From: Ylistrum balloti
Lineage: Eukaryota
Direction of reading: 5' to 3'
Length of the DNA stretch: 64,000 bases
NCBI RefSeq assembly: GCF_031769215.1
Contig: NW_026782351.1
Location: 806,001-870,000, forward strand
The translations under genes were made by a program, and so were the position numbers. Shown piece by piece: positions 1,701-59,912 of the stretch. Below the pieces are notes generated by a model. It saw only the letters and a list, made by a program, of their open reading frames with translations. It did no database searches and had not been told where the DNA came from. How positions within the stretch are numbered: the stretch's first letter is position 1; each line of letters starts with the position of its first letter.

Positions 1701-4700
1701 GTCATGAAAAGACATCAGGTAAAGAAATTAGTAAGGATCATACGATAATGGGCACAAAAATCCTTCTTTTTCAGTTTGTTATAGAATGTTATTATCATTA
1801 CTTTGAAGTTTTTAGTTTCTTTAAAAAAAAAATAAATACTCAAATTCCACTGCTAAATTGAGTTGTGTTAACATTCATATATAATTTGTACACTACCCAA
1901 ACTAGTGCCTGTACTTACCATTTAAATATTCTTTATCCAAATAAGTTAAGATCTTTGACATGGTGGTAGCCCTGTCAGGAGTACTATGAAAATTGATAAC
2001 CTTCAATGATGCTGATTGTGCTCAACCTTAACACGATTTTGATACTTATAACTTTAAATAAAAATGTTTTAACTCTGTATCTGTAAATGAATACTAAAAT
2101 ACATTCATTGGTATAGGTATCATTTCCTTATCCAGGTCTTCAAAATAGTAGGTTTGTACTTGGAGGATTGTGGCAGTAACAAATTTGTATCATGTTATCA
2201 GCCAAACAATAAACAAATAATATAAGACAGAGCATCAGTCACTGACAAAGTCGTTTTGTCATTTTTTTAATTTTTTATCTTTTTTTCCACCATAGTTTTA
2301 CTTGCCCTTGTCCACACTGTCATATCTATCTACACCAGTCACTAGCCACAGACCAGGCCGGACATATGCCAAATCCATGTCTAGTGACTGTTGTCAATGA
2401 CAAGCATGAGCAGAGCACTTTACATCTGTACAAAAATAAGACATGTATACAGAGTGTTGTGCACTCAAATAAAACCAATGTCTTGATCGAAAGCCAGCTC
2501 AGTCAGTTCACACCGTCCACCATGACTATTTCTATCACATGATGAGAGAATCAGCTTCCCTGATTGGTCAGACTACCTTCCAAACATGATGTAAAACTGC
2601 CCATCTTCACACATTCTCTCTCCCTCTGGTCACACAGAACAATGTTGAGGACACCAATCACACATGAAATTGTGCTCCAGGCTTGAAAAATCTGTACCAA
2701 GACATCTGTGGCTGTACAACCAACATGTGACAACACTCATTTCTCGCTCTAGAAGTATTCAGTCACAATCTATCTATGGCACACATCAAGAGACACGGCA
2801 CAATGATTGCTAGAAGTTGATAAATGCTTTGTATACCTAAAATGTATCAAAGTTTTTTGAAGATATTCAGATTTAACTGAGTTGTTTTCTCTTTAAAGTT
2901 CAAATAGGAAAAATCAGTAATAAATGCAAGTTAAAGAAAATAATTGTTTTTGACTGATACTTTTAAACATTACACCTCATATGTAGAGTACACACTAAAG
3001 ATTGATTGAATTAAAAAATTCTGAACACAATTTGTCTCATTCACTTCAACATTTATACTTGCTTGAATAATTAACAAGAATAAACCAGGGAGGATATGCA
3101 TGCATATTTTTTTTTCTTCTAAATGGCCCGTATTCTATTAATCTTCTTAATTTCAATACCTCATAAGAGAAATGTCCAAATAAAAATTACAATAGATGTC
3201 AAGAGATTACTAACAATATTTAACAAATTTCACATAGTGATATTATAGTCTCTTACAATACAGGACTACAGGAAGAAGACTGAGTAAAACTGATAAAAAT
3301 TCTACATTTATACACTCTCACACTTTAAAAATTGCTTTTACTATGGATTGCACCTACAAGTCTTCACTCACAGACACACCCTCTTGCGCAAACAACATAA
3401 AAATTCACACACACAGGCCTGTTTCTACAGGGAAAGACCATTGGTCCACAATATAATTGTTCTATACATCAATGAAGTAAATGACTGTGAGAGTTCTAAA
3501 ATATTCAACACAACAGGTTTAATGATGCAGCACTTTCGAGACAAACAAAATTTGTTAACAATTGAAAATAATCTCTGTGCTATCAACCAAAATTTCAGTA
3601 CATCACAGCCGATCAATGCATACCACCTTAGTACCACCACATATCAAGCCCTTGACTGTAAATTTCACTAACCAAGGACAACAGTAGATATCAATGCCCA
3701 GGTTAGTCCAATTCACTATACACAGGCTTGTAAGTGACTCACTTAATCACATTCATACAGCCCTGAATGTATAACATCACTTGGTAACAGAGGACTTCAA
3801 TGTAGCCGAGTAAAAAGATTACATAATCAACAACTACAATGCCAGCTTTATGCAAAGTAATGATGGCAAGGTGCATGTTCTTCTGTGCTATGTTATTACA
3901 CTACCTAAAACTTATTTTAATTTAAGTTAATGGCTTTACTTTTATCAAATTTCTATTTTTAATTCTGTTTTGTTAGTAAGTTGAAGAGTTGTAATATATG
4001 ATCGTCCAAATACAACACAAATTATGTAATCAGACATTAGATTTTGCCACATCTTCTGTCTTGCCAAATCAAATTTATCTTGAAATTTAGTTTGAAATAG
4101 ACACAAGGAAACAAAGAATGCACTTGCTAACATTATAAGCTATCATATCAATATCAATCACCTCCTTAATCTTATAGGATCACAGTTCAACAGCAGCAAT
4201 AAAGATTTTAAATTACAAAATGGTAAACTGAATGAAACAAAATCTGTGCACGAACATAATGATTTAGTATCCAATACATGTAATGCTATGTACATAGTAC
4301 ATGTGAATACTGTGATATTAGGTGGGATTTATACTACATCATTGTAGTAGGCCCAGGAATTCTGTTTTGATATGTGTAGCAGATTATCTGTCATGACTAG
4401 ATTTCTACTTACAGACAGGATTCTTGGTACAGTAATCAAGGTTTGGCACATATCTACAGTGGCTTCCAATGTCTATAAATATCAGTAAAGGATGAGTATC
4501 GTTACAACTACTAAGGTGGCCATGCTCCCAACCTGACAAGCCAGGCCATAATGGATGTCACACTGGGAACAAACCATATCAACTGTACAAATATGACAGG
4601 CAAGTGCACTTTGGTTTGGACAATTTAGTAAATAAAACATCAAGATTGTGATGTCAAATTACCATTTTGTCTGCTGTACCATACAAATGAGGGTAATGAA

Positions 4701-5448
4701 ATAAAAATACTGAAATATAAGTTTGCAAGAGTAATATAGGGAAATTTCAGTTAGTTTACAAAAGAGAGGGGAAAAATAATACCAAAGCAATATTGGAGAA
4801 AACTGTAGAATAATTTTGTTTTTCACATTGTAATGCAATATGAGATTCTGTTCAAAGCTGCCACATATCTCATCCAACCCTTGAAACAATAAAATCATTT
4901 GACAGCCAAATGGAGCACAAAGTCATTTAAGCTCAATCAGCTACACAGTCTCAAACCAGGAAAAAAATAATAATACAAGCACTCTAAACAGATGTGATGT
5001 GAAGATTTCAACATTCCATCAACTATCAAGAATGACCACAATAATCAAGTTTGATAAGATTGCATTTTTACCCTCCCTAGAAGTAAGTGAGATCAGGTAG
5101 TCTAAGAGGTTCCTGCCCCATAAAGTACAATATACAGTGTATCACAATATGCTGCCTAGACAGACAGCCTATAAGGCTGTCGTCAACATGTCCTGCAACA
5201 TGCTACTGCATGTCATCTGTCACTTTAGGAGGTAATGGGCAAACAACACTTTCATATTGGTAGATCACTACAGTTGAATATACATGAAAGTTGAAATCAA
5301 CAAATGAACTCTTCACTATGTACCATTCACACATCATCCTCACACTCGTCCTGATCAGGTCACTCATGATTGGCAGTTGTAGCAGATCCATGGAAACTGA
5401 ATCATTCATGAAATAGAACTCGTTGAGAATTCCTTTGTCACACTTAAT

Positions 5449-44707: not shown

Positions 44708-47700
44708 ATGGTTGACGCAATCATAATGTTTCACCATGTGCGAGTTAGAATCTCTCAGCTGTTATTGCCACTTTCGGAAACAGTACGAGTTCGTAATTTT
44801 TCAAAGCTGCAAGTGTCTGTTATTTCAAACGGTGGATTTAGCACTCCAAAATCGATCCTGGTGAAAGTGGTTCATGCTGAAAAACAAGAAAAACAATGCA
44901 TCGATGGACGTTATTACACACCTAAGAATTACAAGAGGTTAACATTACACACTACCTGTCATTGGTCCTTGGTTTATATCAAAATCTATCAAACAGGCAT
45001 GGGTCGTGAATTAAAAAAATATTATAACTACTAGCTCAGGCGATTAATTGTAAAACTAAAGGTGCGGCCCCGGTTCCTCAAAAGTTAGTGTGATTTGACA
45101 AGTGGTTAGTGAAAATTGTTTTATTACTACTACTGAACAACCAAGAGTGTTAAATATAAAACAATCACAATATATCTGACCTGTCTCAACAAATATACAG
45201 CTGTGAAATGATGAACCATTTTCAGAAATCTGACAGCTTGTGTTCTGATATAGTGAACATGTAATACATACGACACGTAAACATACCGGACACATGGGGA
45301 CAAATTATTCCTAGATCAATATATGGTACTTGAGAAGTGGGTGGTTAAAGCAAGTAGAAAATACTTGAAACTCATTTTTTTGTTAAAAGAAGGGAAAAAA
45401 TAAAAGATTTGTGACATGTTGGTAATTATCTTCATCTAAATCTTATCCGACTGGGGTACAGCTGAAATAATGCACACTGTCAAAGGCAGTATGCTAAATG
45501 TTGACGTAATGTTTAGGTCAGTATGGTCATTATGATGCCTGGTTACAGCTGTGAATATGACAGTGCCCAATATGCATTGTGTCAATTTGCTTCACATCTA
45601 TATTAATGAAAAGCTGGAAAGAAATCAGGATGATAATGCAATTAATTTGTTACATGGAAATGATATGTATGCAGTAGTATATTTGTGTATATGCAGCTAC
45701 ACACCTGGGGATCCATCATTTGCCTATGATATCCTTCATAATGTCTTACTACTATTTCCTGCGAAGAACTTGGATATCATTCTCTTCATATTTATAAATT
45801 CCCCCTGTCTTTTGATCTACTATTTATTGAGCTATTGATAAAGTAAAAATCGACTTTTTGGATTCTAACTGAAAAGGCTTTTTGCCAGTGTTTCTTCGAA
45901 GAAATGGAGGGAACCTTTTTGCAAATTTCAAAAGTGTATGTGACAGCTTTCTGACTAGAAGGACTGTGTTGCATATGAAGGATGTGATAACTCTCCCTTC
46001 AGGTCCATTCTTACGTACTTGAAAGAATTAGAACTAAAGAGCATATTTAGAGAGTAATACAAAATGAATTGTCAGACTTTGATATCGGGGCATAGCCACA
46101 ATTTTTCTAAGAATACTAATATATGATGTCCCCAATTTCTTTGTGATATGAAGTGCTGTAGACTGTAAGTATGTGTGATGATAAAATTGACGAAGTGGAT
46201 GCGTCATGTTTTTACAGTAATTGAATATTATTTTTCACATACAATTTCCCATTCCTGTGTTTAGATCTACTTAGTTGTCTCTGATTGTGCCAAAGTTATG
46301 AGGATTTTTGGCCTGCTTTTAGAACATGACATAGACATTGTTAGCCTAACAAGTCTGTAAGACTGATAATTTCAAGATGTAGGAACAAGTTATTGCACTA
46401 GTGTTAGGGAACAGGCCTGTAGAAATAGAAAATATATTTAATCTAGAAAGAAAATTAGAAATACGTAGATCTATAAATGCAGTTGAAGTTCTACACCTGA
46501 ATTCAATCTAAACTAGACTTGATGAATATGTATCTTTCTTTTACAGTTACCTGTTTAACTGCGGGGAAGGTACAAAACGAATTTATTCCATAAGCAAGTA
46601 AGTAAAGCTTGTGTTTCTGAGATAGAGTGAGTGAGAAAAAACAGATGGTCTGTTTATTTACTCATTTTCAAGGAAGTATGTCAAAGGTGTAGGTCACATT
46701 GAGTTCAAAGGTCATATTCCTTGTATATGTAGTAAGTTCCAACTTGGTGAAGGTAACGGTAGGTCTATTTTTCATCCCATTTGCAGCTGTGTGTATTTAG
46801 CCCACCATCATCTGATAGTGGGCTATTCAAATGCCTCTGCATCTGTGGTCCGTCCAGGCGTCTGTCCGCCATCTGTAAACAATATTTGTTATCGCTATTT
46901 CTAGATTGATCTTAAGCAAATTGCATATGTATGTTCCCCTTGGTCCCTAGTTGTACCCATTTGATTTTGGGAATGATCAAGAAAACAAAATGACCCACAG
47001 GCAGCCATCTTGGATTTTTTCAATGAAAACTTGTTATCGCAATTTCTTGAAAAGTCATATGTATGTTCCCTTTGGTCTCTCCTTGTGCTTGTTTGCTTTT
47101 GACCAGAAGAAAAAAATGGCTTCCAAATGGCCATTTTAGATTTGGAAGGTGAAGATTATCATTGCTGTTTCTGCAAAGGAATGTTCAAATGTCTTATCAT
47201 TTAGAGCAAAAACAGAGGGGATAAGAAGGGAAAAGATCCAACTTTTAGGGCAAAGCAGTGTTATTAAGTTCTGTTTTAATTAATAGCTAAAGTAAGTATC
47301 TAGTCTATTACTTCTGACTTGCAGAGAGTAGATAATTGAATTTAGGATTAACAGTATTGTTTTGCTTACTACCTTCAGGTTAGTAGACTGAAAGTCAATG
47401 TTATGCTGAGTTACATTATCTGTATATCAAGAGATTTTAATCTACATTGATTCAACATAGCCTATGATTTTTTTACCTTTACTCCAGTTTACGGTGGTTT
47501 AGACTCTATACTTAAGTTTGAACACAGCATCTCCCAGTTTCACAATATTAGTAGTTGCAAATTCATAAGGAATTTAGAAAAAAAAAAAAAAAAACAAACA
47601 AATAAAACCCAGTTAAACAGACATTTGATATGAAATATCTTACTTGTCCATATCACCTTGAATTGAATTAAATGGTGGAGAAATATGTACCATTTGATTT

Positions 47701-50700
47701 ACTTTCTTATAGATTGTCTTCCAACTTTATATTTAATTGTTAATGAAAGAAGTTTTATAATGTACACACTTTAAATATGTAAATAAGTTGTCAACTATTC
47801 ATGAATTTTTCAGACACAAGAAGAATGCCATTGAAGATATTTTTATTACGGTCACAAATTGGGAGAATTTAGGCGGATTGAAAGGTATGTACCTTGTAAG
47901 TTCTGATAGTACTGGGACATACACTTTAAATCAGTTCTTCCTGTCAACATCCTGATGATAAATGTCCAACACTTGATGTCTCCTTTGTGGTGTCTTGATA
48001 ATTACCAATGATAGGTAGACATTCATCTGAAGTTATTTTTCAGAATATCAGCCTTGCTCCAAATTAAAAAAAATTGATTAGGTGAATGTCTCCAGAATGG
48101 GATTTGAGGTGTTGAGAACATACTGAATGGTGTATAAAACTGATGTTGAGGTTAAGGAGTAGATATACTTGTACAATTTAGTTAGATTATGATATGACAC
48201 AATTTTTATATTGATTACTGATTTCCATAAAATTATTGAAATTTATCTTACCAGGGTTACACATATTGCGTGGACATTAATTCATTCTTTTATTATGTAT
48301 ACAGGTTTATTTACTGAACGAGTCAAGTATTTTGAAGGTGAATTCTTCCGTAAAGAGCTTAAGTTATATGGTCCAGAGTTAATGGTAAGACTATATTTTA
48401 TCACATATTAAGTGTTAGACCCTCACACATGTACTAAACAAACCACAGTGCATATAATGTTATTCAACCATTAAAAGAAGACAAGACTTTAAACACGGTT
48501 TTCCTTGGGGTACAGAAAAATTGGAAAGAAAACTATTAGCAAATAAAACATTTGAAGATTTAGTAATAGTTATAAGACTACAGGGCCATACCTGGTCTTC
48601 TTATACAAGTTTCTTTATGTCTAAGTGCGTAAAATAGTATATCATAACAATGCTGGTGTTTGGGGTTTCATCTTAGGTGTCCTATTCTACTAATATACAG
48701 CATGACAAAGAAGTGAAGCACCATTTTGAATTTGTTACAGAAAACAATACTCTACATACAGAATTATCTTGCTTTGTTTTGCTGGGTTTATGACCCGTAG
48801 ACAGCCAGGGTGATTTTTAGGTGGGGTCTCCTTGTGGTAGCTGGTTGCTACCTCCCTGAACAACATACAGGGAGGCCCATTATATTCTATCCAGAGTAAT
48901 AAGGGTAAGGTGTCTTGCCCAAGGACGCAATCACATAAGCAAAAAACTGGTCATTTTCTCAGCTTCCAGGGAAAAGCAAACCAGTACCATGCACATCAGA
49001 TCTTCATCAGACATTGCATAGGTCAACATTCTAACAGACTGAGCTATTGCAGCCTTTCTGAAGTATCCTTTGTGTATGTATCAAAGAAATGATGTTTTTC
49101 TTTTTCATTGTGAATACAAATAAAGGAGAGAGAGAGAGAAAAAATAGAATTAAATCTGAGAAGTATTTTCTAGCTCTCAGCTGAGTTATAGAAACCATAT
49201 TCAACATTCATCAAAGGAACTGGTCAATCTGACTTGTATACTATTATACAAGTCAGATTGACCAGTTCATTTGATATCAATGCTTAAACTGAACATTATT
49301 TACAGGAGGAAGGTAGGACTAATTCTAATTTTAAATTCATTTGTGAAATCAATATTTGACTTTTTCATGAAAATATCTGTTTTTATTCCAACAGTTGGAC
49401 CGCTTCTATGTTGGTAAAGCTCCAGTTTACAGTGAGTATGCCATTGTTACATAGGGTACATTCTAAACCTGGTATTAATGATGCAGTGTAGGTCCTCTTT
49501 AGCACTCTAGTTCATGCATATGCTCAATACACATTACAGTGAATAAGAAATTGTCTTTGAGAGTTTCACCATTCATTTAATTGGCAAGACCGACATGTGT
49601 TATTTGATGAGACAGACTCATGTTTCTTGGAAAGACTTAAAAATATAACTTCAACTGAACAATATCCTCCATTCAGCTGTACTATACCTGGACACATATA
49701 CCATTTACAAGTATGTGTACTGTACCATGTATAAAATGTTTTCTTGTCAGAATGAAACATGGTACCTGTATAGTTGTGGGTGTCATGATACCTTTAAAAT
49801 TACTTTTATTGTTGTCAGAATATACATTTGAAATTGTCCTTAAAATGAAAGAAATCAGTATATCTGAAAAAGGTAGTGCAATGTTATTGTTCTGAATGTA
49901 AGGCATTTAGGTCATCTGACACAAAGATAGTAATTTTGTTTTGTCCATTGTCATGTTCCATGCATAAACTTTTTTCACATTTTAAACTTCTCAAATTCCA
50001 TCAGTGGGGTCCAGCTCATATTTTCCTGAAATCACCCTGAGATCTGTTGATTATTGATTCTGATTTTTCTAAAAAAAAATGTGTATAATTTTTTGATACC
50101 ATTGATGTTTTTAAAGGTTTGGTAAATGCAACAATGGATTCATTCCATGAAGATGAACATGTACAGATAAAGTTCATACCATTTTTTCCTGAACTGTCTG
50201 ATGAAGATTTTAAAGGATATCCACCCAGCGTTATCGATGAAACAAAAAGTGGGTATACTTGATTATTGTCATGATAATATGAAGTTACAATGGCCTCTTA
50301 TAAATGAAGATCAATTAAACGTATTGAAAAAAAATGCCCTTTAATCTTTGTTTAAAATTCTATGGCTGTTGTTATGTTACCCTAACTTACACCTAGTCCT
50401 TAATATGTATTTAATTCTAATGAACCTCTATACTGTATCATTACTAATGCGTAATTTACCAATAGACTGGAAAATTGAAGGAGTACAACCAAAGATGAAG
50501 CGAAGAATGTCCTCCATAGTGTACATACTAAAGGTGAGAGCTACCTTTCTATCTGAGAGACTTGCTGTCAGTTTAAAGTCTGATTACATATGAAGGTGAA
50601 AGGTCAGAGTTGTTAGCTCCTTAAACTTCCTGGAATGGTTTCTGAACATTGATTCAATGAAAGGTAACCAGCCTTGCACCTCATACATTCTCTGTGTATG

Positions 50701-53700
50701 ATGTATTAGTAAAAGCTCCAGGTCAGCGATCCTCCTCTCCTTCATTTGATTTTGTGCTTTCATTTCTATTATACGAAACATTAATAAGGGTCATGTACAC
50801 ATCCTATCAAAGATTACAAACATGACATATTATTTTGTTTGAACAAAGTGATATGTAGTTAAGATTCATTTTTAGGATACATGATAATATCCAGAATTGT
50901 GTTGGTTTTCAATTCATGGTAAATATTTCTTTGACAGTTGAGAGGTGAAAATAACACTCAGCCAGCTATCATGAGTAAGTACATCAGTTGAATTAAGAAT
51001 GATCTACTCTTTCTAAATATCAAGAATGAATCATATATATGATGTATTGATGATCCTGACTGATATTTTGATCTGTGTGAGTTTAAAAATGGTTATGTCA
51101 GGAATTTTAGTTATCAGTCCTTCAACTGCTTTTTTTCCTTGTAAAGGAATAGGGAGCTTTATGTGTTTTGAAACTTTTTCATTTTTATCCCTGTAAAGAA
51201 GTTTATGTCAGTTTCTAAGAAGATGTTTGGTCTGTAGCAACCAGATTGTTGTATAACTAGACAAAATATGTGGTGTAACTCAAAATCATGATAAACATGC
51301 TTGTTGATCATAGAGATTTTCAATGTTGTCTTCGATATTGGGTTAAATACCTGAATTTTTTATATGGAAAACCCCCCCTTTTTTTACTCATTTTATTTGA
51401 ATTTTTTCTCTCATTTTTCTTGTGTTTTTGGACTTCATTTGTCATTTTGAGATTTTGAGAGGGTCAAAGAGGGATCAAACAGTTGATGGAAATCTTGTTG
51501 CAAATGAAGAACAAATAACAGAACTCATGTAGCTTGTACTAAGACAAAATGTATATTTTGGCTTTTCTAGTACTTGATTGCCCAGATAAGAGGTACTTAA
51601 GCAGCCTGTTGGAGTCAGAAGATTTGAAGAAATACCAAAGTGCACAGGGAACATACGTATTCCACTTATCTCCTACCAGTGTAGTAGAAGATCCTAGATA
51701 CAAAACATTCATTGACAGGTAAATTGAAATGTATATCTTTGATTTTGCTGTGAAACACAGATATTACCTAATTGTTCTCTTTTACATAAAGCTAAATATC
51801 AGTCTAAAAACAAGTACTTTTAAGTGGGTATTCAGTATGGTGATGTCTGTCCTCTTCTTTCTTCAGATTTCATAGTTCAAACGAACATATTCATGTGAAA
51901 GAAACGCAAGAACAGCCATTTCACTATCCAATCAGCACTATCCAGACTGCTCTTAATGAATTGGACAATCATGTTTTCCCTCTGCTGCCTTCCTCGGCAA
52001 ACCGGAATGAACACAAATATACTGTATTACGAAGTAAGATGAATAAAGACAAAGTACTGTCAATGACAAGTGGAAAAACTCTAGAGTTTGCCAACAACTC
52101 TGTCAAAATGATCAACAATTTCAGGTTGGTATAAGCATGCCCAGGCATCCAAAATGTAACAAAATCAATAAAAGTTTGTAATTGTCAGGTATCCTGGTGA
52201 CAAATAGTTACATGAATGTAAGGATGATTGACATGGGTTTGTAAATATCTGGTATCCAGGCGACAAATAGCTACATGAATGTAAGGATGATTGACACAGG
52301 TTTGTAACTATCTTGTATATTCCAAAGGGCCAAGTGACCTATTGGCATACCATGGTGTTTCTGGTCCGTCAATTTTTTCAACATATTGCTACTAGCCATG
52401 AGTAACTGAATGTATTTCGACCAAATTTTGTCAGAAGCATCCTTTGGGAAAGTAAAAAAAAATTTGTGTAAATAGTAGGTATAAGCCCCCAAGGGCCTTA
52501 GGGGTAGGGTCAAAATTTGGTATAAATGGTTGGTCTCTGTCCCCTGGGGCAAGAGGGATTGGGCCAACTAGAAAAAATAATTCAAATTCTTTAAAATCCT
52601 ACTCATTCTATAGGGATGATTGGGTTTGACCAATTTTGTCTTAAGCATTCTTTGGTAATGGGTAATCAATTTTGTATAAATAGTGGGTCTTAGCTCCCTG
52701 TGGTAGATAGAGCAATGCCAAAAATTCAAAATAGAGCAAATTCTTAAAAATCTAATTCTCCTGTAGGAATGATTTGGTCTGAAGTATGAATGGTTTCGTT
52801 GACCCCTGGGAAGTTTTCCCTTGTGTGCTTGGATATTTTAGAATTACTTTTCCTTTAGTTTTAATGAAGCAATTTCACTCAAGCAAAACCTGATGAACAA
52901 TCCAGGCCCTATGGGCTTCTTATTTTCTTTGCCTGCACTCGAGCATCTTCATTCCTTAAGAGACTTTCATCAAATCACACTTAAAATGACCAGAATATCT
53001 TGGACAAGTTTGAGTTTCCGGATTGGTAGGTCAAGGTCAAGGTCAAGGTCACTTAATATTTTTAGAAATTTGTTGTAAGCACTCTAGCAGCTTCACTCCT
53101 TGAGGAATATTCACCTATTTTTACACATTCTTTAAACACTTACATATGTGGAACAAGTTCAAGTTGTGGGTTGTTGGGTTGAGGTAAAGGTTACTTACTG
53201 TATTTATATTTTTTGAAAATCATTGTCATCACTCTGATGGCTTCAATCGGAAAGAGATTTTCATCAAAATTCACACACTTTGAAAGCACAAGTTCCAGTT
53301 TCAGGGTTGTTGGGTCAAGGTCAAGGTCAGCATTACTATTGCTCTAGTGATTTCATTTCTTACAGGATTTTGACCAAACCTCACACACTTACAAATGACT
53401 ATAACACATTGTTACACATCAGTAATACTTGTCATACTTACTTATTGCTTTGTTCCATTAACATAAGTTACAAACTAATTGTATATTTTTCTTTTTTCCA
53501 AATTCCACCAGACAGTACCACCTTTATATGGTGTTATGTAAATGAAGTTTAAATATAACTAATGATTTATGTATGTCAGTGATGATGGAAGAAGTTATCA
53601 TATTTAAATTGACCTTTCTGTTTTATAATTAGGGATGTAGCTGTTTCTTATAAGAATGGCATCCAGAAATTACAGAATGCTGATGAGAAATATCTTGGTT

Positions 53701-56700
53701 CAGTCAAAGAATTTGTAAAAAAACAAAAGCGAGATAAAGGTACAAAAAAGTCTTATTTCTTATGTAAAGCATTGCATTACTTTGTGTTTGTGCTGGTTAT
53801 TCAGGTTTTGGACATAATGAAGGAGTTCTGGGGCAATCATTTCAAACTATTAAATGATTGTGTCTCTATTACATTCATTTGTCAAGTGTATTACATTTGT
53901 GTCATTTAAACTCACGTCAAGTTGAAAGTTTAAAAATGTCCTTGAATTCTGATAACTTTACATATACTTAAATTTGGTAGTGCATTGATATTACTTGATA
54001 ATTCATTATGTTATGCTTTGGAAACAAGATTGATGTCCCTTCATTTCCAGTTAGTTTGAACAAGTCAGTAACACTGCCAACAAGTTCCATTCTTGATAGT
54101 TTTTACTGAAAATTTATAGTTAAAGATGAGAATACTTGGAAGGGTGAAGATACATCTATTTATGATCTACAGAACATTTCTTCTGAAAACACATGGCTTT
54201 GTGTGTCTACATATGCAAATGTCATGTAGATCTTGCTGTATGGATCATCATTTGTAGATAGTGTCTACTGACTCAAGGATTTTTGTTTTGCTATGATGAA
54301 GGAATGGAAGCAAGACTTAGGTGTTATTGTTTTGTTTGCATTTGAACCAAACATTCATCTAGATCAGTTTCTGAGAAAATAAATGACCAAACTAAAAGAT
54401 ACTTTGATTAACTCAAATTAGGGCAAAATTTGAGATAATGAGTATTGCAGACCATTTTAGTTGACTTTGAGAATTATCTACAAATCTTCATAAAAAAATT
54501 CTGATTCACATTCCTTCAACAAAAAAAAGTTATTTGATGTATTAAACAGGCTTGTAAAGGATTTAATCAGAATCTGTTTTTGTGTAATTAACCAGTCATT
54601 ACAGACATTGTTATTTTAATGAGACAAAACAGGGACTTAAAGATATATAATTTTGTGGAGTTCTTGTCATCATATGTTTGTACATAAGAGAATTGAAACA
54701 TAATAGATATACTTGTAAATTTTCAGTGGTATACCCAGTTATAACATTCCTAGGGACTGGAGCTACAACATCCACCCTGTTGAGGAATGTGACAGGAATA
54801 TACTTGGAGATAGAGTAAGTTTCAAGGCTGATGACTTTATTCTCTGTATTTAAGAATCTTTCACTCTCTTGGAGATTAATGGAAAACCTTTCACTGGTAA
54901 TAGCAGATAGAGAAGTAGGTATTTTGTTTTACTGGGAATGGTAGATAGATAAATAGGTATCTTTTATTGGTAATGGTGATAAAATGGATATTTTTCACTG
55001 GAAATGGTAGATAGATAAATACATGTAATAATAGATAAATAGCAAACATTTCACTGGTAATGGTTATAAATAGGATGTGTTTCACTGGTAATGGTTATAA
55101 ATAGGATGTGTTTCACTGCTAATGGTTATAAATAGGATGTGTTTCACTGCTAATGGTTATAAATAGGATGTCTTTCACTGCTAATGGTTATAAATAGGAT
55201 GTCATTCACTTGTAATGGTAGATAGATAGATAGGAGATCTTTCACATTCTGACACTTTCTTCTGCCTTACAGCTCATTGCATTGTTTTCACACATTTTAG
55301 CCCAGACGCTGCCATTCTGTTGGACTGTGGAGAAGGCACTTTCATGCAGATGTACCACCACTTTGGTAGTGAGACGAGCAAAATGCTAAGAAAACTCAAG
55401 TGCATCTTCATTTCTCATCTACATGCCGACCACATTGTGGTTAGTGTGAGCCAATAGTTCATACTTTGCTGAGTTAATTAGTAGCACTTTAGTTTCTATG
55501 TGAAATCAAAATTTTAATATTTTGTTTCTTGATGTGAAACTATCTACCGGTATATGAATAGCAAGCATTAGTTTTTAAATTTTTTGTTTTTTTGTACAGA
55601 CTGTACCATTGTACCATTTTATCAGTAGAGAAATCAGAATATTCGACCAATGCTTTTGTTTTTCACATAGAACGAAGAGTTTTAAGAAAAAAAATTCTGA
55701 GTTTCAATTTATTTGTATTGTTCCAGGGTTTAGCTAGTATTCTTAAGCAGAGACACTTGGCATTTAAGGAGATTGGAGTTCCAGTGGAGCCTGTTGACAT
55801 CATTGGAGAGGATGACATGACCAGTTTAATCTATACCATAGAATACTTTGTACCTAATATTTTGCAGGAGACAGTGTAGGTTTATAGAAAATCAGAATAT
55901 TTTGACTTGTGGTCTGCTTTCATCAGCAGCAAAAAGCTTGTATAAGATTCCTCATTTAGACTCAACAGATTTAGATCATTTAGTCCTTGTATACACCATA
56001 ATATTCAATCATTTAATTTCTACAACATGGTTCACTGGTCAAGATTAAAGAAAGGACATACCGGACAATTTCTGCAAAGAAAATCTAACACTTGTTTATA
56101 TTCACATCATGTTATTGGGAATTGAGAGTTATACACCTAATCATACCCAAGCGAAGAAGTTTTGGGGTGCGGGTATACTGGAATCACCAATCTAGATTAA
56201 GTATACACCGTCAACTTCTGCACTTCATTAACTTTTGGTGGTCATCAATAGTCAAGGTTAGTCTCAACTTCACCAGCATAGTCAGTTCAGGTCCAAGATG
56301 TGCATATCTCAATATGAACTAGTCTGAATTTCAAAATGGCTACCAGCAGCCAGTTTGGATTTTGGTATTGAATTTTGTGATGGCAATTTACTGCAGGCTG
56401 CGACATATACTGTACACCAGTTTCGCTCTATAAAAATTTAATGATTTTAAGGAGGTAGTGGAAATTTCACTACTCCTGACTGGAAAAGTGTCACTTAGGG
56501 TAAAGACAAACTTTAGATTGATCCAAAACATATCTATTTATTATGGGGCCAGAGATTTCCCCCTATACAGTAATAATCTGAAGATGGCTGCTAGTAGCCA
56601 TGTTGGATTTTGACATTGGAATTTTGTTATTGTTATTTCCTAAGAACTAATGTAGTGATCGTCATCAGATATTGTGGTTCAGGTAGGGTCTTAATCATGT

Positions 56701-59700
56701 ATGTCACATTGTAAACTTTCTTGGACATTCAAGATGGATGCCATTTTGAATTTGATACTCGAAGTTATTCAGTCTTTCTAGGTCACCATAACAGAATCTC
56801 AGGGTGACCTTTTGTGATACCTTTTTGTTCGGCATTGTCAGTTGTACGTCAGTAAAATTATAACTTTTTCTACTTCTTCTGGAAAACCCCTGAACTGATT
56901 TCACTGAAACTTGGTAGAAACCATATATGGCCAAAGATTTACCAAAACTGTATATTGTATGGTCCCCTGAGGGATGGAGCTAAAACGGTCAAACTGACAT
57001 AAATTTCAGAAATCTCAATATCCAAATATGGTTGAATCAAGTTGTGGATGAAAGGACCCTAAGGTGTTTAACCAAAATTGTTAACTTTAATACTCCCAGG
57101 GTCTTGCATTTCCCCTTGGGAGGGAGTAAAGTTTACTATAGTTTATATAGGAAAATTACTTTTTTGAACATAATATGTTTATTTTTATTGGAAAAAGATC
57201 AAACTTGGTTAGAATTGTTGGTATAGAATGAGAATTTGATGTAATGCACTTATTGACCCTAGCCAAAAAGGGTCAAATTTACAGAAATTTCAAAAGTTTT
57301 GGGTAAAATCTAACACTCTTCATGGATGGAAGGGACATAAAATAAAAATTCTCAATTCCTACACAAATAACATTTCTCATCTGTATACTACATTCACTCC
57401 CGTTGTTTGTGAGTTAACTCGGGTTACTATTTAGGCCCCCTTGGCCTCTTGTGTATGTATAACTGATAGTGCTACAAATCTTACTAAGAACAATAGATCA
57501 TAGATTCATCAAATTCACCATGAATATCTTCTGCATTACAAACATTGCTAACTATGACATTACGTAGAACTTAGGGATTGACTCCAAATATCTATTTACA
57601 ACTGAAATAAAGTGTTTTAAATGTAAATTTCTGCATTCCCTTTCATAAAAACAATTCATTATGATTTACTAATGTGACTGTAGGATGATTGGCCCTGAGG
57701 ATCCTTGGTTTTCTGTTCAGGACTGAATACTGTAGCTCATTTTTATCTCTTTTTAGTTTACATGTATCAAGGAACTTCAGATCAAAAAGGTACATGTCAG
57801 AAATTCATACAAAACTGAACTTGCAAGAGGTAAGATTTCGCAGTTTTATTGACATCAAGGGGGCATTGTGTCTTAACAGCATTCACTATTTTATTTTTTA
57901 TTTTTCATAAATGTTGGTTACTGCTAATAATAACTTATTTTAGTGACCTACAAGTTAGGACATTTCATTGACCTTGACGTTTTGGTAATGTTTTGGGTTT
58001 AGTCAAGGTCATTACATTGACATCAGTAAAACTTGCCATCTTGACTTCAGACTTGCTATCAGTTGTGAAATTGGATCCTTGCGTTTGTTGAACTGAAAGG
58101 AAGGAATAAAAACATTAATTACTAATGCAGCTAATGCATTATTCAGACAGATGTTAATGAGTTTGACTGACTATTTAAGTGGTGTGTTACATCTCAAATG
58201 AATTTGTATCAGTATGTGGTATTAGTTGTGCCATTACTTTGCCTCTTTCCTGTGTTAATCGGTATTCATGCTTGTTTTTCAGTTGACAACTGTTAAAGCT
58301 CTACACAACTTTGGTCGTGCACATTCTGTTTCCATCAAACATGACAGTGGTTGGCACCTAGTGTTTTCAGGAGACACCATGCCATCCGACAGTCTCATTA
58401 GGCTTGGTGAGTTCCCCTCTCTTCTTGTTGAATAATTTAAAGGCTGCTTTAGAACAAACATTTCTTATTGGGTACAGGCCCATGTTCGGCATCCCATCCT
58501 CCTATTTTTCACATCTCCATTCAGCATTATTGTAAAAAGAAACATTGAATAAGAACTCATGCATAATGTCAGTTTTGTTTAAACTGCATTTATCTGTACA
58601 CCAGAATTATTAACAAAGACCATTAGATAATTTTTACTTTTGTGCTGCTGTTTAGTGTACAACACCATGTCTACGTACCTAATTGTGATATTATAATGAC
58701 CTGTTAGGTGTAGAAGATGTGTGAAGTATAGAGGGAAACAGCTCTTGCCCCATTACTGGTAAAATAGGATACATGTTCTCCGGTAATTAAAAGAAAATAA
58801 ACATTAAGTGTTTAAAAGTGATTCAAATGGGTAGAAAGTAAGTTGTGATACCTGCTAGAAAAAAATCCTTAAATTTGTTCACTCGGTAGAAAATCTGTTT
58901 TTTATTGGACAGGTTTTAGATGTGACATACTAATACATGAAGCCACCTTTTCTACACAAGCTGCAGCTGGAGCCAAGAAAAGTCATCACAGGTAAACATT
59001 ATCATTATTCACATTAACTAGCTATGAAATGTTTTGAATCTTTCCAAGTAATTCAGAATGATTCCTTGTCAGTTTTACAGCCAGCATGCAACTAGTCAAA
59101 GCCAGGAACAGTTCAACACTTGAAAATACTAACCTTTTGAGATTTTAACATCACTCTTTCTGACAAGTCAATTTGCAATGAAAATGTTATATTGCATGGT
59201 CACATAACAGTGTACCATGCAATGATATTTTTTCTCTTGAAATATAACAGAAAATGATTCATTCAATTACAAATAGAGCAAACACAGCACATGATGTAAT
59301 AAACAAAATCATACCACAGAATCTTAAACTTTCTTTAGGAAAAATATTTTAACAAGTCTCTGATTTCAGTACTGTAGAAGAAGCAGTGACAACGAGTAAA
59401 CGTATGAAAGCCAAGAAAACCATCTTAACTCACTTCAGTCCACAAACTCTACTGGATGAGAAGAAGTTGATCTTATCACAGACTGATTTAACGATTGCAA
59501 TGGACCATATGAGGGTAAAATTAGTTTTTGGAAGGAAGAAACAAAACATTATATTTTATCATTAATGCTTCAGTTTTTAGTTTTAAAAGTGTGTAATTAC
59601 ACCAATAATTAACACTATTGTTAATTGTTTTTTGTTCTTACCCCATTAGCAGCTAGCTCGCTACAGTAATAAAATCTCCTAAAAATCTGCCATTTTTCCT

Positions 59701-59912
59701 ACAGGCTTTTCTTGGTGCCTACTTTTATAAGTCGGTGATATTTTGTCAATTTATCAGGCTTTCTGAGAAAATGCTGGCATGTTTTATCCAAGTGATCCTA
59801 AATGTTATCATTCTTTTTATTTCAGCTTCAAAGGAGTGATCTGGAATACACACCTCTTTTCAATCCGTTTCTCCTGGAGTTATCAAATTATACGTTCTAC
59901 AGATGGCGTTAG
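44708..59912 (+). CDS. ELAC2: Divergent long-form ribonuclease Z (ELAC2/tRNase ZL-like metallo-beta-lactamase), 700 aa
   Basis: Exons: 44708-44937, 46547-46597, 47814-47884, 48305-48384, 49395-49431, 50117-50248, 50466-50533, 50938-50974, 51571-51718, 51867-52124, 53633-53739, 54727-54814, 55301-55439, 55727-55875, 57757-57829, 58283-58406, 58913-58991, 59370-59514, 59826-59912; sum 2103 nt, phases consistent. Motifs YLFNCGEGT, IFITVTNWENLGGL, LDCPD, YPVITFLGTG, LLDCGEGT, SHLHADH, FSGDT, IHEAT, HST, THFS, AMDHM. Ortholog versus paralog is unresolved. Confidence 0.9.
46796..47150. mobile_element. Helentron/HINE-like non-autonomous element
   Basis: Subterminal hairpin AGCCCACCATC/GATAGTGGGCT (46799-46824), then a GTCC-type microsatellite, then tandem core units. 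This is the usual HINE layout. Confidence 0.65.
48775..48940 (-). mobile_element. SINE fragment
   Basis: GC-richer block ending AAGGTGTCTTGCCCAAGGAC, a motif I recall from invertebrate SINE bodies. Not verified. Confidence 0.4.
49210..49275. repeat. Near-perfect 31-bp inverted repeat with a 4-nt loop
   Basis: GAACTGGTCAATCTGACTTGTATA (49217-49240), CTAT, then its exact reverse complement (49245-49268). Extends 6 more bp past one mismatch. Confidence 0.95.
52188..52316. repeat. 63-bp tandem duplication
   Basis: GGTATCC.GG.GACAAATAG.TACATGAATGTAAGGATGATTGACA at 52188 and 52251. Confidence 0.85.
52325..53480. mobile_element. Adjacent degenerate HINE-like repeats, with GGTCAAGGTCA motifs
   Basis: AAGTGACCTATT head, repeated GACCAA(A)TTTTGTC..AAGCAT units, and GGTCAAGGTCAAGGTCA runs near 53030 and 53313. 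Boundaries approximate. Confidence 0.45.
54889..55245. repeat. 31-bp minisatellite (TTCACTGSTAATGGTTATAAATAGGATGTGT) with longer degenerate flanking units
   Basis: Near-identical copies from 55050 at 31-nt spacing. Confidence 0.9.
56330..57240. mobile_element. Two HINE-like repeats (about 56330-56640 and 56775-57240)
   Basis: AA(A/G)ATGGCT.C.AG.AGCCA..TTGGATTTTG cores and subterminal inverted repeat AGGTCACC/GGTGACCT (56780-56810). Confidence 0.5.

What the first reader, a model, noticed from the sequence alone, without database searches (positions are those of the whole stretch)
54727..59514. Catalytic residues intact but tRNA-contacting motifs rewritten in the RNase Z homolog
Seen: metal and acid-base motifs are all present (LLDCGEGT, SHLHADH, motif III His in ALHNFG, SGDT, HEAT, HST, THFS, AMDH). 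The PxKxRN loop reads GATTSTLLRNV (P to S, K to L), and HFSQRY reads HFSPQT. Established: PxKxRN and the motif V Arg are near-invariant substrate/CCA-proximal residues in tRNase ZL. Inference: selection kept the nuclease chemistry while changing specificity, possibly losing CCA anti-determination.
Basis: partly seen in the sequence, partly recalled or inferred. Interest (0 to 1): 0.7.

Follow-up and report, generated by a model that had tools for sequence, protein, structure and literature searches.

The report
Scallop ELAC2 copy without tRNA clamp
Scallops keep, under purifying selection, a copy of the tRNA-trimming enzyme ELAC2 whose metal-dependent cutting centre is complete but whose residues that normally grip the tRNA end are nearly all replaced, so it probably cuts something other than ordinary pre-tRNAs, or finds them in a different way.

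Summary
Window 54727-59514 is exons 12-18 of a 19-exon gene (44726-59912, +) in the scallop Ylistrum balloti. It encodes a 694-aa "ELAC2-like" protein.

- **Catalytic residues:** all are present (motifs I-V, HEAT, HST, AxDx, and the loop Arg-Asn).
- **Changed loops:** the PxKxRN loop reads STLLRN and HFSQRY reads HFSPQT. Independent DNA runs confirm the sequence.
- **Ortholog:** Pecten maximus has the same 19-exon gene (70% identity, dN/dS about 0.2). It also lacks the loop Lys and the motif V Arg and Tyr (PTTLRN, HFKSQA).
- **Where conservation is lost:** among 118 columns at least 90% conserved in 205 canonical long RNase Z proteins, all 13 catalytic or scaffold residues survive. Of 11 published tRNA-end and CCA-contact residues, 8 are lost in both scallops (p = 7e-4).
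- **How unusual:** Lys loss alone is not special. Arm-bearing pteriomorph bivalve ELAC2s and S. pombe Trz2 lack it too. Arg-to-Gln in motif V has no parallel among the intact proteins compared.
- **Selection pattern:** the two loops differ between the scallops, which looks like relaxed constraint rather than a new motif.

The scan already reported this same gene on this window for its missing flexible arm (s1-254156).

I could not establish whether scallops also have a canonical ELAC2, or whether this gene is expressed. My verdict is a new variant of a known kind, of moderate interest.

The parts
44726..59912 (+). Whole gene: 19 exons encoding the 694-aa ELAC2-like protein P0001 of Ylistrum balloti (contig JAUZWB010000470.1, 850,726-865,912)
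   Evidence: The spliced translation matches P0001 exactly. The database name is and the contig position.
44726..44937 (+). Exon 1. It carries a 25-28 residue Arg-rich N-terminal extension ending in VRNF|S (Pecten: VRDF|S). This resembles a mitochondrial presequence with an R-3 cleavage motif (inference only).
   Evidence: Sequences; AlphaFold puts a helix at residues 2-12. No targeting predictor was available.
54727..54814 (+). Exon 12, start of the catalytic lobe. The P-loop GTGATTSTLLRN is at 54753-54788. Relative to human ELAC2, S490 is Ala, P493 is Ser and K495 is Leu; R497 and N498 are kept.
   Evidence: AlphaFold pLDDT is below 50 for residues 414-418.
55301..55439 (+). Exon 13: motif I (LLDCGEGT, 55317-55340) and motif II (HLHADH, 55416-55433)
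   Evidence: This exon matches human ELAC2 residues 507-551 at E = 5e-15. D438, H469, H471, D473 and H474 are invariant columns.
55727..55875 (+). Exon 14 (GLASILKQRH...)
   Evidence: 84% identical in Pecten.
57757..57829 (+). Exon 15 (LHVSRNFRSKRYMSEIHTKLNLQE)
   Evidence: The Pecten gene has an exon of the same size.
58283..58406 (+). Exon 16: motif III His (58304-58306) and motif IV SGDT (58367-58378)
   Evidence: H558 and D581 are invariant columns.
58913..58991 (+). Exon 17: HEAT (58936-58947) and the HST His (58987-58989). The position equivalent to human K700 is Ser.
59370..59514 (+). Exon 18: motif V HFSPQT (59431-59448). His and Phe are kept; Q727 is Pro, R728 is Gln and Y729 is Thr, followed by a 3-residue insertion. 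AxDx (AMDH) is at 59497-59508.
59826..59912 (+). Exon 19: a short C-terminal helix (residues 675-693) that stops about where the basic part of the human C-terminal helix (R781, R782, R785) begins
   Evidence: The exon is conserved in Pecten (DL.YTPLFNPF.LELSNY). Helix prediction; alignment.

Best explanation
This is a functional ELAC2-derived gene, conserved in scallops and seen so far in Ylistrum and Pecten. It keeps the two-lobed long RNase Z fold and a complete two-zinc phosphodiesterase centre. It has lost the parts that dock a pre-tRNA:
- the Lys-Arg pair that clamps the acceptor stem on both sides of the scissile bond (human K495 and R728)
- Tyr729 and Gln727, which position that Arg
- K700
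- the CCA-reading residues S490, Q92 and T127
- the flexible arm
- the basic distal part of the C-terminal helix

Shown: gene structure, motif content, orthology with Pecten, purifying selection, concentration of losses on published RNA-contact positions, and retention of the fold.

Inferred:
- The protein is still a metal-dependent hydrolase but is a poor or non-canonical pre-tRNA 3' endonuclease.
- It is probably a paralog that took on another phosphodiester substrate, or a partner-delivered one.
- It is possibly imported into mitochondria, because the N-terminus looks like a presequence.
- Its core is unusually basic, so an RNA substrate bound in a different way is the most likely case.
For: - **Gene structure:** the 19-exon map is exact, and the Pecten ortholog has 19 exons, 15 of them of the same size, with CEP131 and APH-domain genes flanking in both species.
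- **Selection:** dN/dS is 0.20 with dS about 0.9, and about 0.18 over the catalytic half.
- **Conserved columns:** of 118 columns at least 90% conserved in 205 canonical proteins, 83 are kept in both scallops, including all 13 catalytic or scaffold residues. Of 11 published tRNA-end and CCA contacts, 8 are lost in both and 2 in one (Fisher p = 7e-4).
- **Motif V:** the Arg is Gln in both scallops, against 213 of 215 Arg elsewhere. The two exceptions look like broken gene models.
- **Residue roles from the literature:** K495 and R728 form the acceptor-stem clamp, and P493L and Y729C are pathogenic (PMC6764886). S490, S726, Q92, T127 and K700 read the CCA end, and the HFSQRY motif is central to both cleavage and anti-determination (PMC11649783). 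The K700A/R728A mutant has lowered activity (PMC11602120). Arm deletion abolishes cleavage, and the arm and C-terminal helix contact TRMT10C (PMC11996679).
- **Fold:** the AlphaFold model has pLDDT 83 and pTM 0.86, and its best structural matches are human ELAC2 (TM 0.72-0.86).
- **Missing arm:** the arm region is a gap in the alignments, and no arm-like remnant is in the introns.
- **Sequence confirmed:** independent DNA contigs agree with the exon sequence.
Against: - No expression evidence: no RNA run holds the stretch.
- No enzyme assay.
- A canonical, arm-bearing ELAC2 elsewhere in scallop genomes was neither found nor excluded. The three word searches are lossy; they also missed all oyster ELAC2 proteins, and the search with P0152 as query did not return the scallop genes themselves.
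- Some tRNA-facing residues are kept: K99, K101, the GP motif, and K731 under one of two alignments.
- The protein is more basic than canonical ELAC2, with an N-lobe net charge of +8 (Ylistrum) and +4 (Pecten) against a mean of -5.3. It may therefore still bind tRNA.
- Functional tRNase Z enzymes without the loop Lys exist, such as S. pombe Trz2.
- Only two orthologs were available, and dS is close to saturation.
Confidence: 0.6

Rival explanations
1. It is still a tRNA 3'-processing enzyme, either the only long RNase Z of scallops or a mitochondria-dedicated one. In this reading it holds tRNA through other surfaces or partner proteins, and the changed loops are tolerated.
For: - The constrained tree joining the scallop genes to the pteriomorph ELAC2 clade (Mytilus plus P0152) is not rejected and is slightly better (lnL +2.5, p-AU 0.60).
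- That clade already lacks the loop Lys while keeping the arm.
- S. pombe mitochondrial Trz2 works with the loop PTWRRS.
- The N-terminus resembles a presequence.
- K99, K101 and the GP motif are kept, and the protein is basic.
- No canonical scallop ELAC2 was retrieved.
Against: - Arm deletion abolishes cleavage by human ELAC2.
- In human ELAC2 the arm and the C-terminal helix are themselves the contacts to the mitochondrial TRMT10C platform (PMC11996679).
- Loss of R728, Y729 and Q727 is not seen in any intact tRNase Z of 219.
- The stem leading to the scallop pair is very long (3.6 changes per site).
- The chiton canonical ELAC2 has different gene neighbours, which is weak evidence.
- The failure to retrieve a canonical copy is uninformative, because the searches were lossy.
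Confidence: 0.2
2. It is a dedicated non-RNA phosphodiesterase. One candidate is a mitochondrial protein deAMPylase that erases SelO-type AMPylation. Another is an enzyme for small substrates such as 2',3'-cyclic phosphate ends.
For: - E. coli RNase Z and yeast and human ELAC2 remove AMP from AMPylated SelO substrates using the same active site (PMC12663964).
- This gene has an intact active site, lacks the tRNA clamp, and has a presequence-like N-terminus.
Against: - Exosite deletion lowered deAMPylation in E. coli RNase Z (PMC12663964).
- The basic surface fits nucleic acid better.
- Nothing in the sequence points specifically to a protein substrate.
Confidence: 0.1
3. It is a catalytically silent scaffold or regulator (a pseudoenzyme) that keeps the metal site for folding only.
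For: - The neighbouring copy 2 has Asn at the motif V His position, so the lineage tolerates loss of a metal ligand.
- The P-loop is modelled as disordered.
Against: All 13 catalytic or scaffold residues are kept in both species over a dS of about 0.9. That includes the proton-relay Glu and His of the HEAT and HST motifs, which are not needed for folding.
Confidence: 0.07
4. It is a decaying pseudogene or an artefact of annotation or assembly.
For: No RNA evidence was obtained.
Against: - Nineteen open exons with GT-AG (or GC-AG) borders are conserved in two genera.
- dN/dS is 0.2.
- Four independent DNA runs agree.
Confidence: 0.03

Closest known systems
Human ELAC2 (tRNase ZL; PDB 8z0p, 9ey0-9ey2, 8rr1)
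   Same: - Two tandem metallo-beta-lactamase lobes.
- Best sequence match in the PDB (E = 1e-70) and best structural match (TM 0.72-0.86).
- Motifs I-V, HEAT, HST, AxDx, the GP motif and the loop Arg-Asn are present.
   Different: - 29-31% identity, against 37-52% among canonical molluscan proteins.
- No flexible arm.
- K495, R728, Y729, Q727, K700, S490, Q92 and T127 are replaced.
- The motif V loop is 3 residues longer.
- The C-terminal helix is cut short.
- The N-terminal extension is short, with a single start codon.
S. pombe Trz2 (mitochondrial tRNase ZL)
   Same: - A second long RNase Z in one genome.
- Variant P-loop without the Lys (PTWRRS).
- Mitochondrial.
   Different: Trz2 keeps the motif V Arg (HFSQRS) and is a working tRNA 3' endonuclease. 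The scallop protein has lost that Arg.
Arm-bearing pteriomorph bivalve ELAC2 (Mytilus trossulus P0279; unnamed transcript P0152)
   Same: - Probably the closest canonical kin.
- Their P-loops already lack the Lys (PGAFRN, PSLLRN).
- Tandem ELAC2 duplication also occurs in Mytilus.
   Different: They keep the arm, HFSQRY, K700 and a long basic C-terminal helix.
Metazoan ELAC1 (tRNase ZS) with the PxPxRG loop
   Same: A natural RNase Z with a rewritten P-loop, thought to act on substrates other than pre-tRNA 3' trailers (PMC3433465, PMC13692180).
   Different: ELAC1 is a single-lobe homodimer that keeps the arm and HFSQRY. The scallop protein is a long form.
Capitella teleta tRNase ZL-like protein lacking the GP motif, and the second tRNase ZL of Lottia (PMC3433465)
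   Same: Extra, partly degenerate long-form copies in lophotrochozoans have been noted before.
   Different: The scallop gene keeps the GP motif but lacks the arm and clamp. I did not compare these sequences directly.

Membership tests
tRNase ZL / ELAC2 (long-form RNase Z) | Two tandem metallo-beta-lactamase lobes, a pseudo-catalytic N-lobe and a catalytic C-lobe | tested here: met
   Pfam Lactamase_B_4 (35.8 bits, cut-off 27) in the N-lobe and Lactamase_B_2 (59.8 bits) in the C-lobe. The AlphaFold model matches human ELAC2 with TM 0.72-0.86.
tRNase ZL / ELAC2 (long-form RNase Z) | Catalytic motifs in the C-lobe: motif I Asp, HxHxDH, motif III His, motif IV Asp, HEAT Glu, HST His, motif V His, AxDx Asp | tested here: met
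   D438, H469, H471, D473, H474, H558, D581, E601, H617, H639 and D663 are all present in Ylistrum and Pecten.
tRNase ZL / ELAC2 (long-form RNase Z) | PxKxRN loop | tested here: not met
   STLLRN in Ylistrum and PTTLRN in Pecten. Arg and Asn are kept, Lys is lost in both, and Pro is lost in Ylistrum. About 15 of 219 otherwise canonical proteins also lack the Lys.
tRNase ZL / ELAC2 (long-form RNase Z) | Motif V loop HFSQRY with the substrate-clamping Arg | tested here: not met
   HFSPQT and HFKSQA. Arg is Gln in both scallops, against 213 of 215 Arg elsewhere.
tRNase ZL / ELAC2 (long-form RNase Z) | Flexible arm (exosite) in the N-lobe | tested here: not met
   The arm columns are gaps in both scallops. 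The protein has 111 residues where human ELAC2 has 178. tblastn finds no arm-like remnant in the introns.
tRNase ZL / ELAC2 (long-form RNase Z) | GP motif in the N-lobe | tested here: met
   G134 and P135 in LYGPE.
tRNase ZL / ELAC2 (long-form RNase Z) | Long polar C-terminal helix that lines the acceptor stem | tested here: inconclusive
   A helix of about 19 residues is predicted (675-693). The protein ends about where human R781 lies, and 1-2 terminal basic residues remain: RWR in Ylistrum and KR in Pecten.
tRNase ZL / ELAC2 (long-form RNase Z) | Endonucleolytic removal of pre-tRNA 3' trailers, inhibited by a CCA end | not testable with these tools
   This needs an enzyme assay.
tRNase ZS / ELAC1 (short form) | A single lobe of 280-360 residues with a PxPxRG loop | tested here: not met
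   The protein has 694 residues and two lobes. ELAC1 matches the C-lobe only (E = 4e-17).

The most novel reading that the evidence does not exclude
Scallops have turned a duplicate of the essential tRNA 3' endonuclease into a mitochondrial phosphodiesterase that no longer uses tRNA shape to choose its target. It could be a dedicated protein deAMPylase, or an RNase for non-tRNA RNA ends. The more radical version is that this arm-less, clamp-less protein is the only long RNase Z scallops have. In that case, tRNA 3' processing in scallops would run on a recognition mode not yet described.
Probability: 0.15. Interest if true: 0.85.

Novelty: new variant of a known kind. Interest (0 to 1): 0.55.

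Why it matters
Structural work on human ELAC2 concluded that cleavage and CCA discrimination use the same residues and could not be separated by mutation (PMC11649783). This gene is a natural experiment on that point. Evolution kept every catalytic residue under selection while removing the arm, the Lys-Arg clamp and the CCA-reading residues.

Assaying it would show what the bare ELAC2 active site can do on its own. It could also point to a physiological non-tRNA substrate of RNase Z. That question was reopened by reports of a deAMPylase activity of RNase Z (PMC12663964) and of new ELAC1 substrates (PMC13692180). The gene also adds to evidence that pteriomorph bivalves duplicate ELAC2 repeatedly.

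Tried and rejected
- **Expression:** two run searches found only DNA holders and no RNA run. The laid contigs show no splice joints. Expression is untested.
- **Canonical scallop ELAC2:** three word-index protein searches, with P0001, a unionid protein and the pteriomorph transcript P0152 as queries, returned no scallop or oyster canonical ELAC2. The last search did not even return the scallop genes, so this blank means nothing. The single exhaustive search was used to obtain full-length relatives from one exon. The Atlas look-ups added nothing.
- **Unnamed fragments:** I tried to identify the organism behind P0004 and P0152 from their contigs. One is a compact gene of an unknown invertebrate with a canonical P-loop. 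Neither is informative.
- **Synteny:** the chiton canonical ELAC2 has other neighbours. The Mytilus trossulus locus shows no other called gene within 10 kb, and the Mytilus galloprovincialis locus shows only further ELAC2-like genes. Two look-ups failed. This is weak evidence either way.
- **Phylogenetic placement:** the free tree leaves the scallop pair unplaced on a very long stem and attracts it to other long branches. Only the constrained test was usable.
- **Rejected:** pseudogene, mis-assembly and wrong exon choice.
- **Weakened:** a simple 'mitochondrial platform replaces the arm' idea. In humans the arm and the C-terminal helix are themselves the contacts to that platform (PMC11996679).


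Full report
**What is there**

The window has no N and is AT-rich animal DNA.

An exhaustive search with the exon carrying motifs I and II returned a 694-aa protein with 100% identity, P0001. It is named 'zinc phosphodiesterase ELAC protein 2-like [Ylistrum balloti]'. A spliced map reproduces P0001 exactly from 19 exons at 44726-59912. The finding's coordinates are the start of exon 12 and the end of exon 18. The gene lies at 850,726-865,912 of contig JAUZWB010000470.1, between a CEP131 gene and an APH-domain gene.

**Check of the observation**

All catalytic motifs are present:
- motif I (LLDCGEGT)
- HLHADH
- motif III His
- SGDT
- HEAT
- HST
- motif V His
- AMDH

The P-loop reads GTGATTSTLLRN and motif V reads HFSPQT.

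Contigs of four DNA runs from two studies cover the stretch. Among the differences listed (19 more were not shown), the only exonic ones are two synonymous changes, so the sequence is real.

In 219 other long-form proteins the canonical residues are common but not equally so:
- P-loop: P 213, K 204, R 219, N 212
- Motif V: S 212, Q 204, R 213 of 215, Y 210

**Relatives**

Pecten maximus has an ortholog, P0151 (702 aa, 70% identity). It has 19 exons, 15 of them of the same size as in Ylistrum, and the same flanking genes.
- Its P-loop is PTTLRN and its motif V is HFKSQA.
- The loop Lys and the motif V Gln-Arg-Tyr are therefore lost in both species, and Gln replaces the Arg in both.
- Pro is lost only in Ylistrum, and the motif V Ser only in Pecten.

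Pairwise dN/dS is 0.20 (bootstrap 0.16-0.25) at dS of about 0.9. It is 0.18 over exons 12-18 and 0.14 over the last exon. This is a gene under purifying selection, not a relic.

**Are the substitutions special?**

Only partly. The loop Lys is also missing in proteins that otherwise look canonical:
- the arm-bearing pteriomorph proteins P0152 (PSLLRN) and Mytilus trossulus P0279 (PGAFRN)
- S. pombe mitochondrial Trz2 (PTWRRS)
- heterobranch gastropods (PNRIRG or PNRIRA)
- a hemichordate, a spider and an orthonectid

All of these keep the motif V Arg. Loss of that Arg appears otherwise only in two models that look broken.

**An unbiased view of what was lost**

I took every alignment column that is at least 90% conserved in 205 canonical proteins, which gave 118 columns.
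- The scallop pair keeps 83, loses 30 in both species and loses 5 in one.
- All 13 catalytic or scaffold residues are kept.
- The lost-in-both set contains Q92, T127, S490, K495, K700, Q727, R728 and Y729 (human numbering from the alignments), plus the arm columns.

These are the residues that published structures assign to the tRNA end:
- K495 and R728 clamp the acceptor stem beside the scissile bond. P493 and Y729 position them (PMC6764886).
- S490 and S726 read the first C of the CCA end.
- Q92 and T127 read the second C of the CCA end.
- K700 holds the phosphate between them (PMC11649783).

Of the 11 such residues that are conserved, 8 are lost in both scallops. Among the other 107 conserved columns, 22 are lost in both (Fisher p = 7e-4).

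Kept on the tRNA side are K99, K101, the GP motif, and K731 under the MAFFT alignment but not the HMMER one.

**Fold and other tRNA-binding parts**

With a 66-sequence alignment, AlphaFold gives pLDDT 83 and pTM 0.86. The best structural matches are the human ELAC2 structures. The P-loop (residues 414-418) is the one short segment inside the catalytic lobe with pLDDT below 50.

The flexible arm is absent, and no remnant lies in the introns. The scan reported this before for the same gene (s1-254156).

The C-terminal helix is present but short. It ends about where the basic residues R781, R782 and R785 of the human helix begin.

**Origin**

The scallop proteins share only 29-31% identity with any canonical ELAC2, whereas canonical molluscan proteins share 37-52% with each other. 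They sit on a very long stem.

A tree that forces them together with Mytilus and P0152 is not rejected and is slightly better. This fits the shared loss of the loop Lys.

A second, more degenerate copy lies about 15 kb downstream on the opposite strand.
- It diverged before the Ylistrum-Pecten split.
- It has Asn in place of the motif V His and a different P-loop.

Whether scallops also have an arm-bearing ELAC2 could not be settled. The word searches are too lossy to read a blank.

**Mechanism**

- **Shown:** an intact hydrolytic centre and fold, maintained by selection, combined with loss of the known tRNA-docking elements.
- **Inferred:** the protein still hydrolyses phosphodiesters, but it cannot clamp an acceptor stem or read the CCA end as ELAC2 does.
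- **Relaxation, not a new motif:** the two loops differ between the two scallops at 3 of 7 and 4 of 7 positions. Over the whole protein, 29% of positions differ. This looks like relaxed constraint.
- **Charge:** the core is unusually basic. The N-lobe net charge is +8 in Ylistrum and +4 in Pecten, against a canonical mean of -5.3. An RNA substrate bound in another way is therefore my first choice.
- **Published alternative:** RNase Z has a reported protein deAMPylase activity (PMC12663964).
- **Location:** the N-terminus (Arg-rich, with VR[ND]F|S in both species) resembles a mitochondrial presequence with an R-3 site. This rests on my own knowledge of such motifs and was not tested.
- **Platform idea weakened:** handing tRNA recognition to the mitochondrial TRMT10C platform is less likely, because in humans the arm and the C-terminal helix make the contacts to that platform, and arm deletion abolishes cleavage (PMC11996679).

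**Verdict**

This is a new variant of a known kind. It is already annotated as ELAC2-like and was already flagged by this scan for its missing arm. My literature searches found no description of it.

Noticed in passing
L001:10001-30235 (same contig, about 880,984-901,218, minus strand; outside the window): A second arm-less ELAC2-like gene lies about 15 kb downstream of this one, in convergent orientation. It is annotated as two genes (P0002, 454 aa, plus a 169-aa product). All catalytic-lobe exons are open, but motif V reads TNFVNED (His replaced by Asn), motif I reads DCGSG and the P-loop reads GTAGRDHVRRNN. It has no N-terminal extension.
   Followed up: partly
L001:22818-24791: A 26-bp minisatellite of about 76 copies fills the intron of copy 2 where the annotation splits the gene in two.
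   Followed up: partly
L008:10001-35141 (Mytilus galloprovincialis): Three consecutive called genes, each with an 803-aa ELAC2-like product, form a tandem array. Mytilus trossulus P0279 and M. galloprovincialis P0297 share only 53% identity, so Mytilus carries distinct ELAC2 paralogs.
   Followed up: no
P0152, P0279, P0285, P0286, P0302 (proteins): The P-loop Lys is missing in otherwise canonical, arm-bearing ELAC2 proteins of pteriomorph bivalves (Leu or Ala). It is Arg, with the Asn replaced by Gly or Ala, in heterobranch gastropods (Aplysia, Elysia).
   Followed up: partly
window:57105-57271: This intronic segment has a contig word depth of 2,600-5,000, against 10-20 for its flanks, in all four DNA runs, with many loose ends. 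It is a very high-copy interspersed repeat.
   Followed up: no
window:54931-54996 and 55049-55219: All four DNA runs skip 66 bases in intron 12 relative to the assembly. A 31-bp tandem repeat of 5.5 copies lies just downstream.
   Followed up: no
window:59975-60728: A 29/58-bp minisatellite (13 copies of 58 bp, 85% matches) begins 63 bases after the gene's stop codon.
   Followed up: no
P0266 (Solemya velum, 1331 aa): Two separate parts of this protein match the same exons of the window gene (for example residues 476-526 and 1022-1064). It looks like two tandem ELAC2 genes fused by annotation.
   Followed up: no
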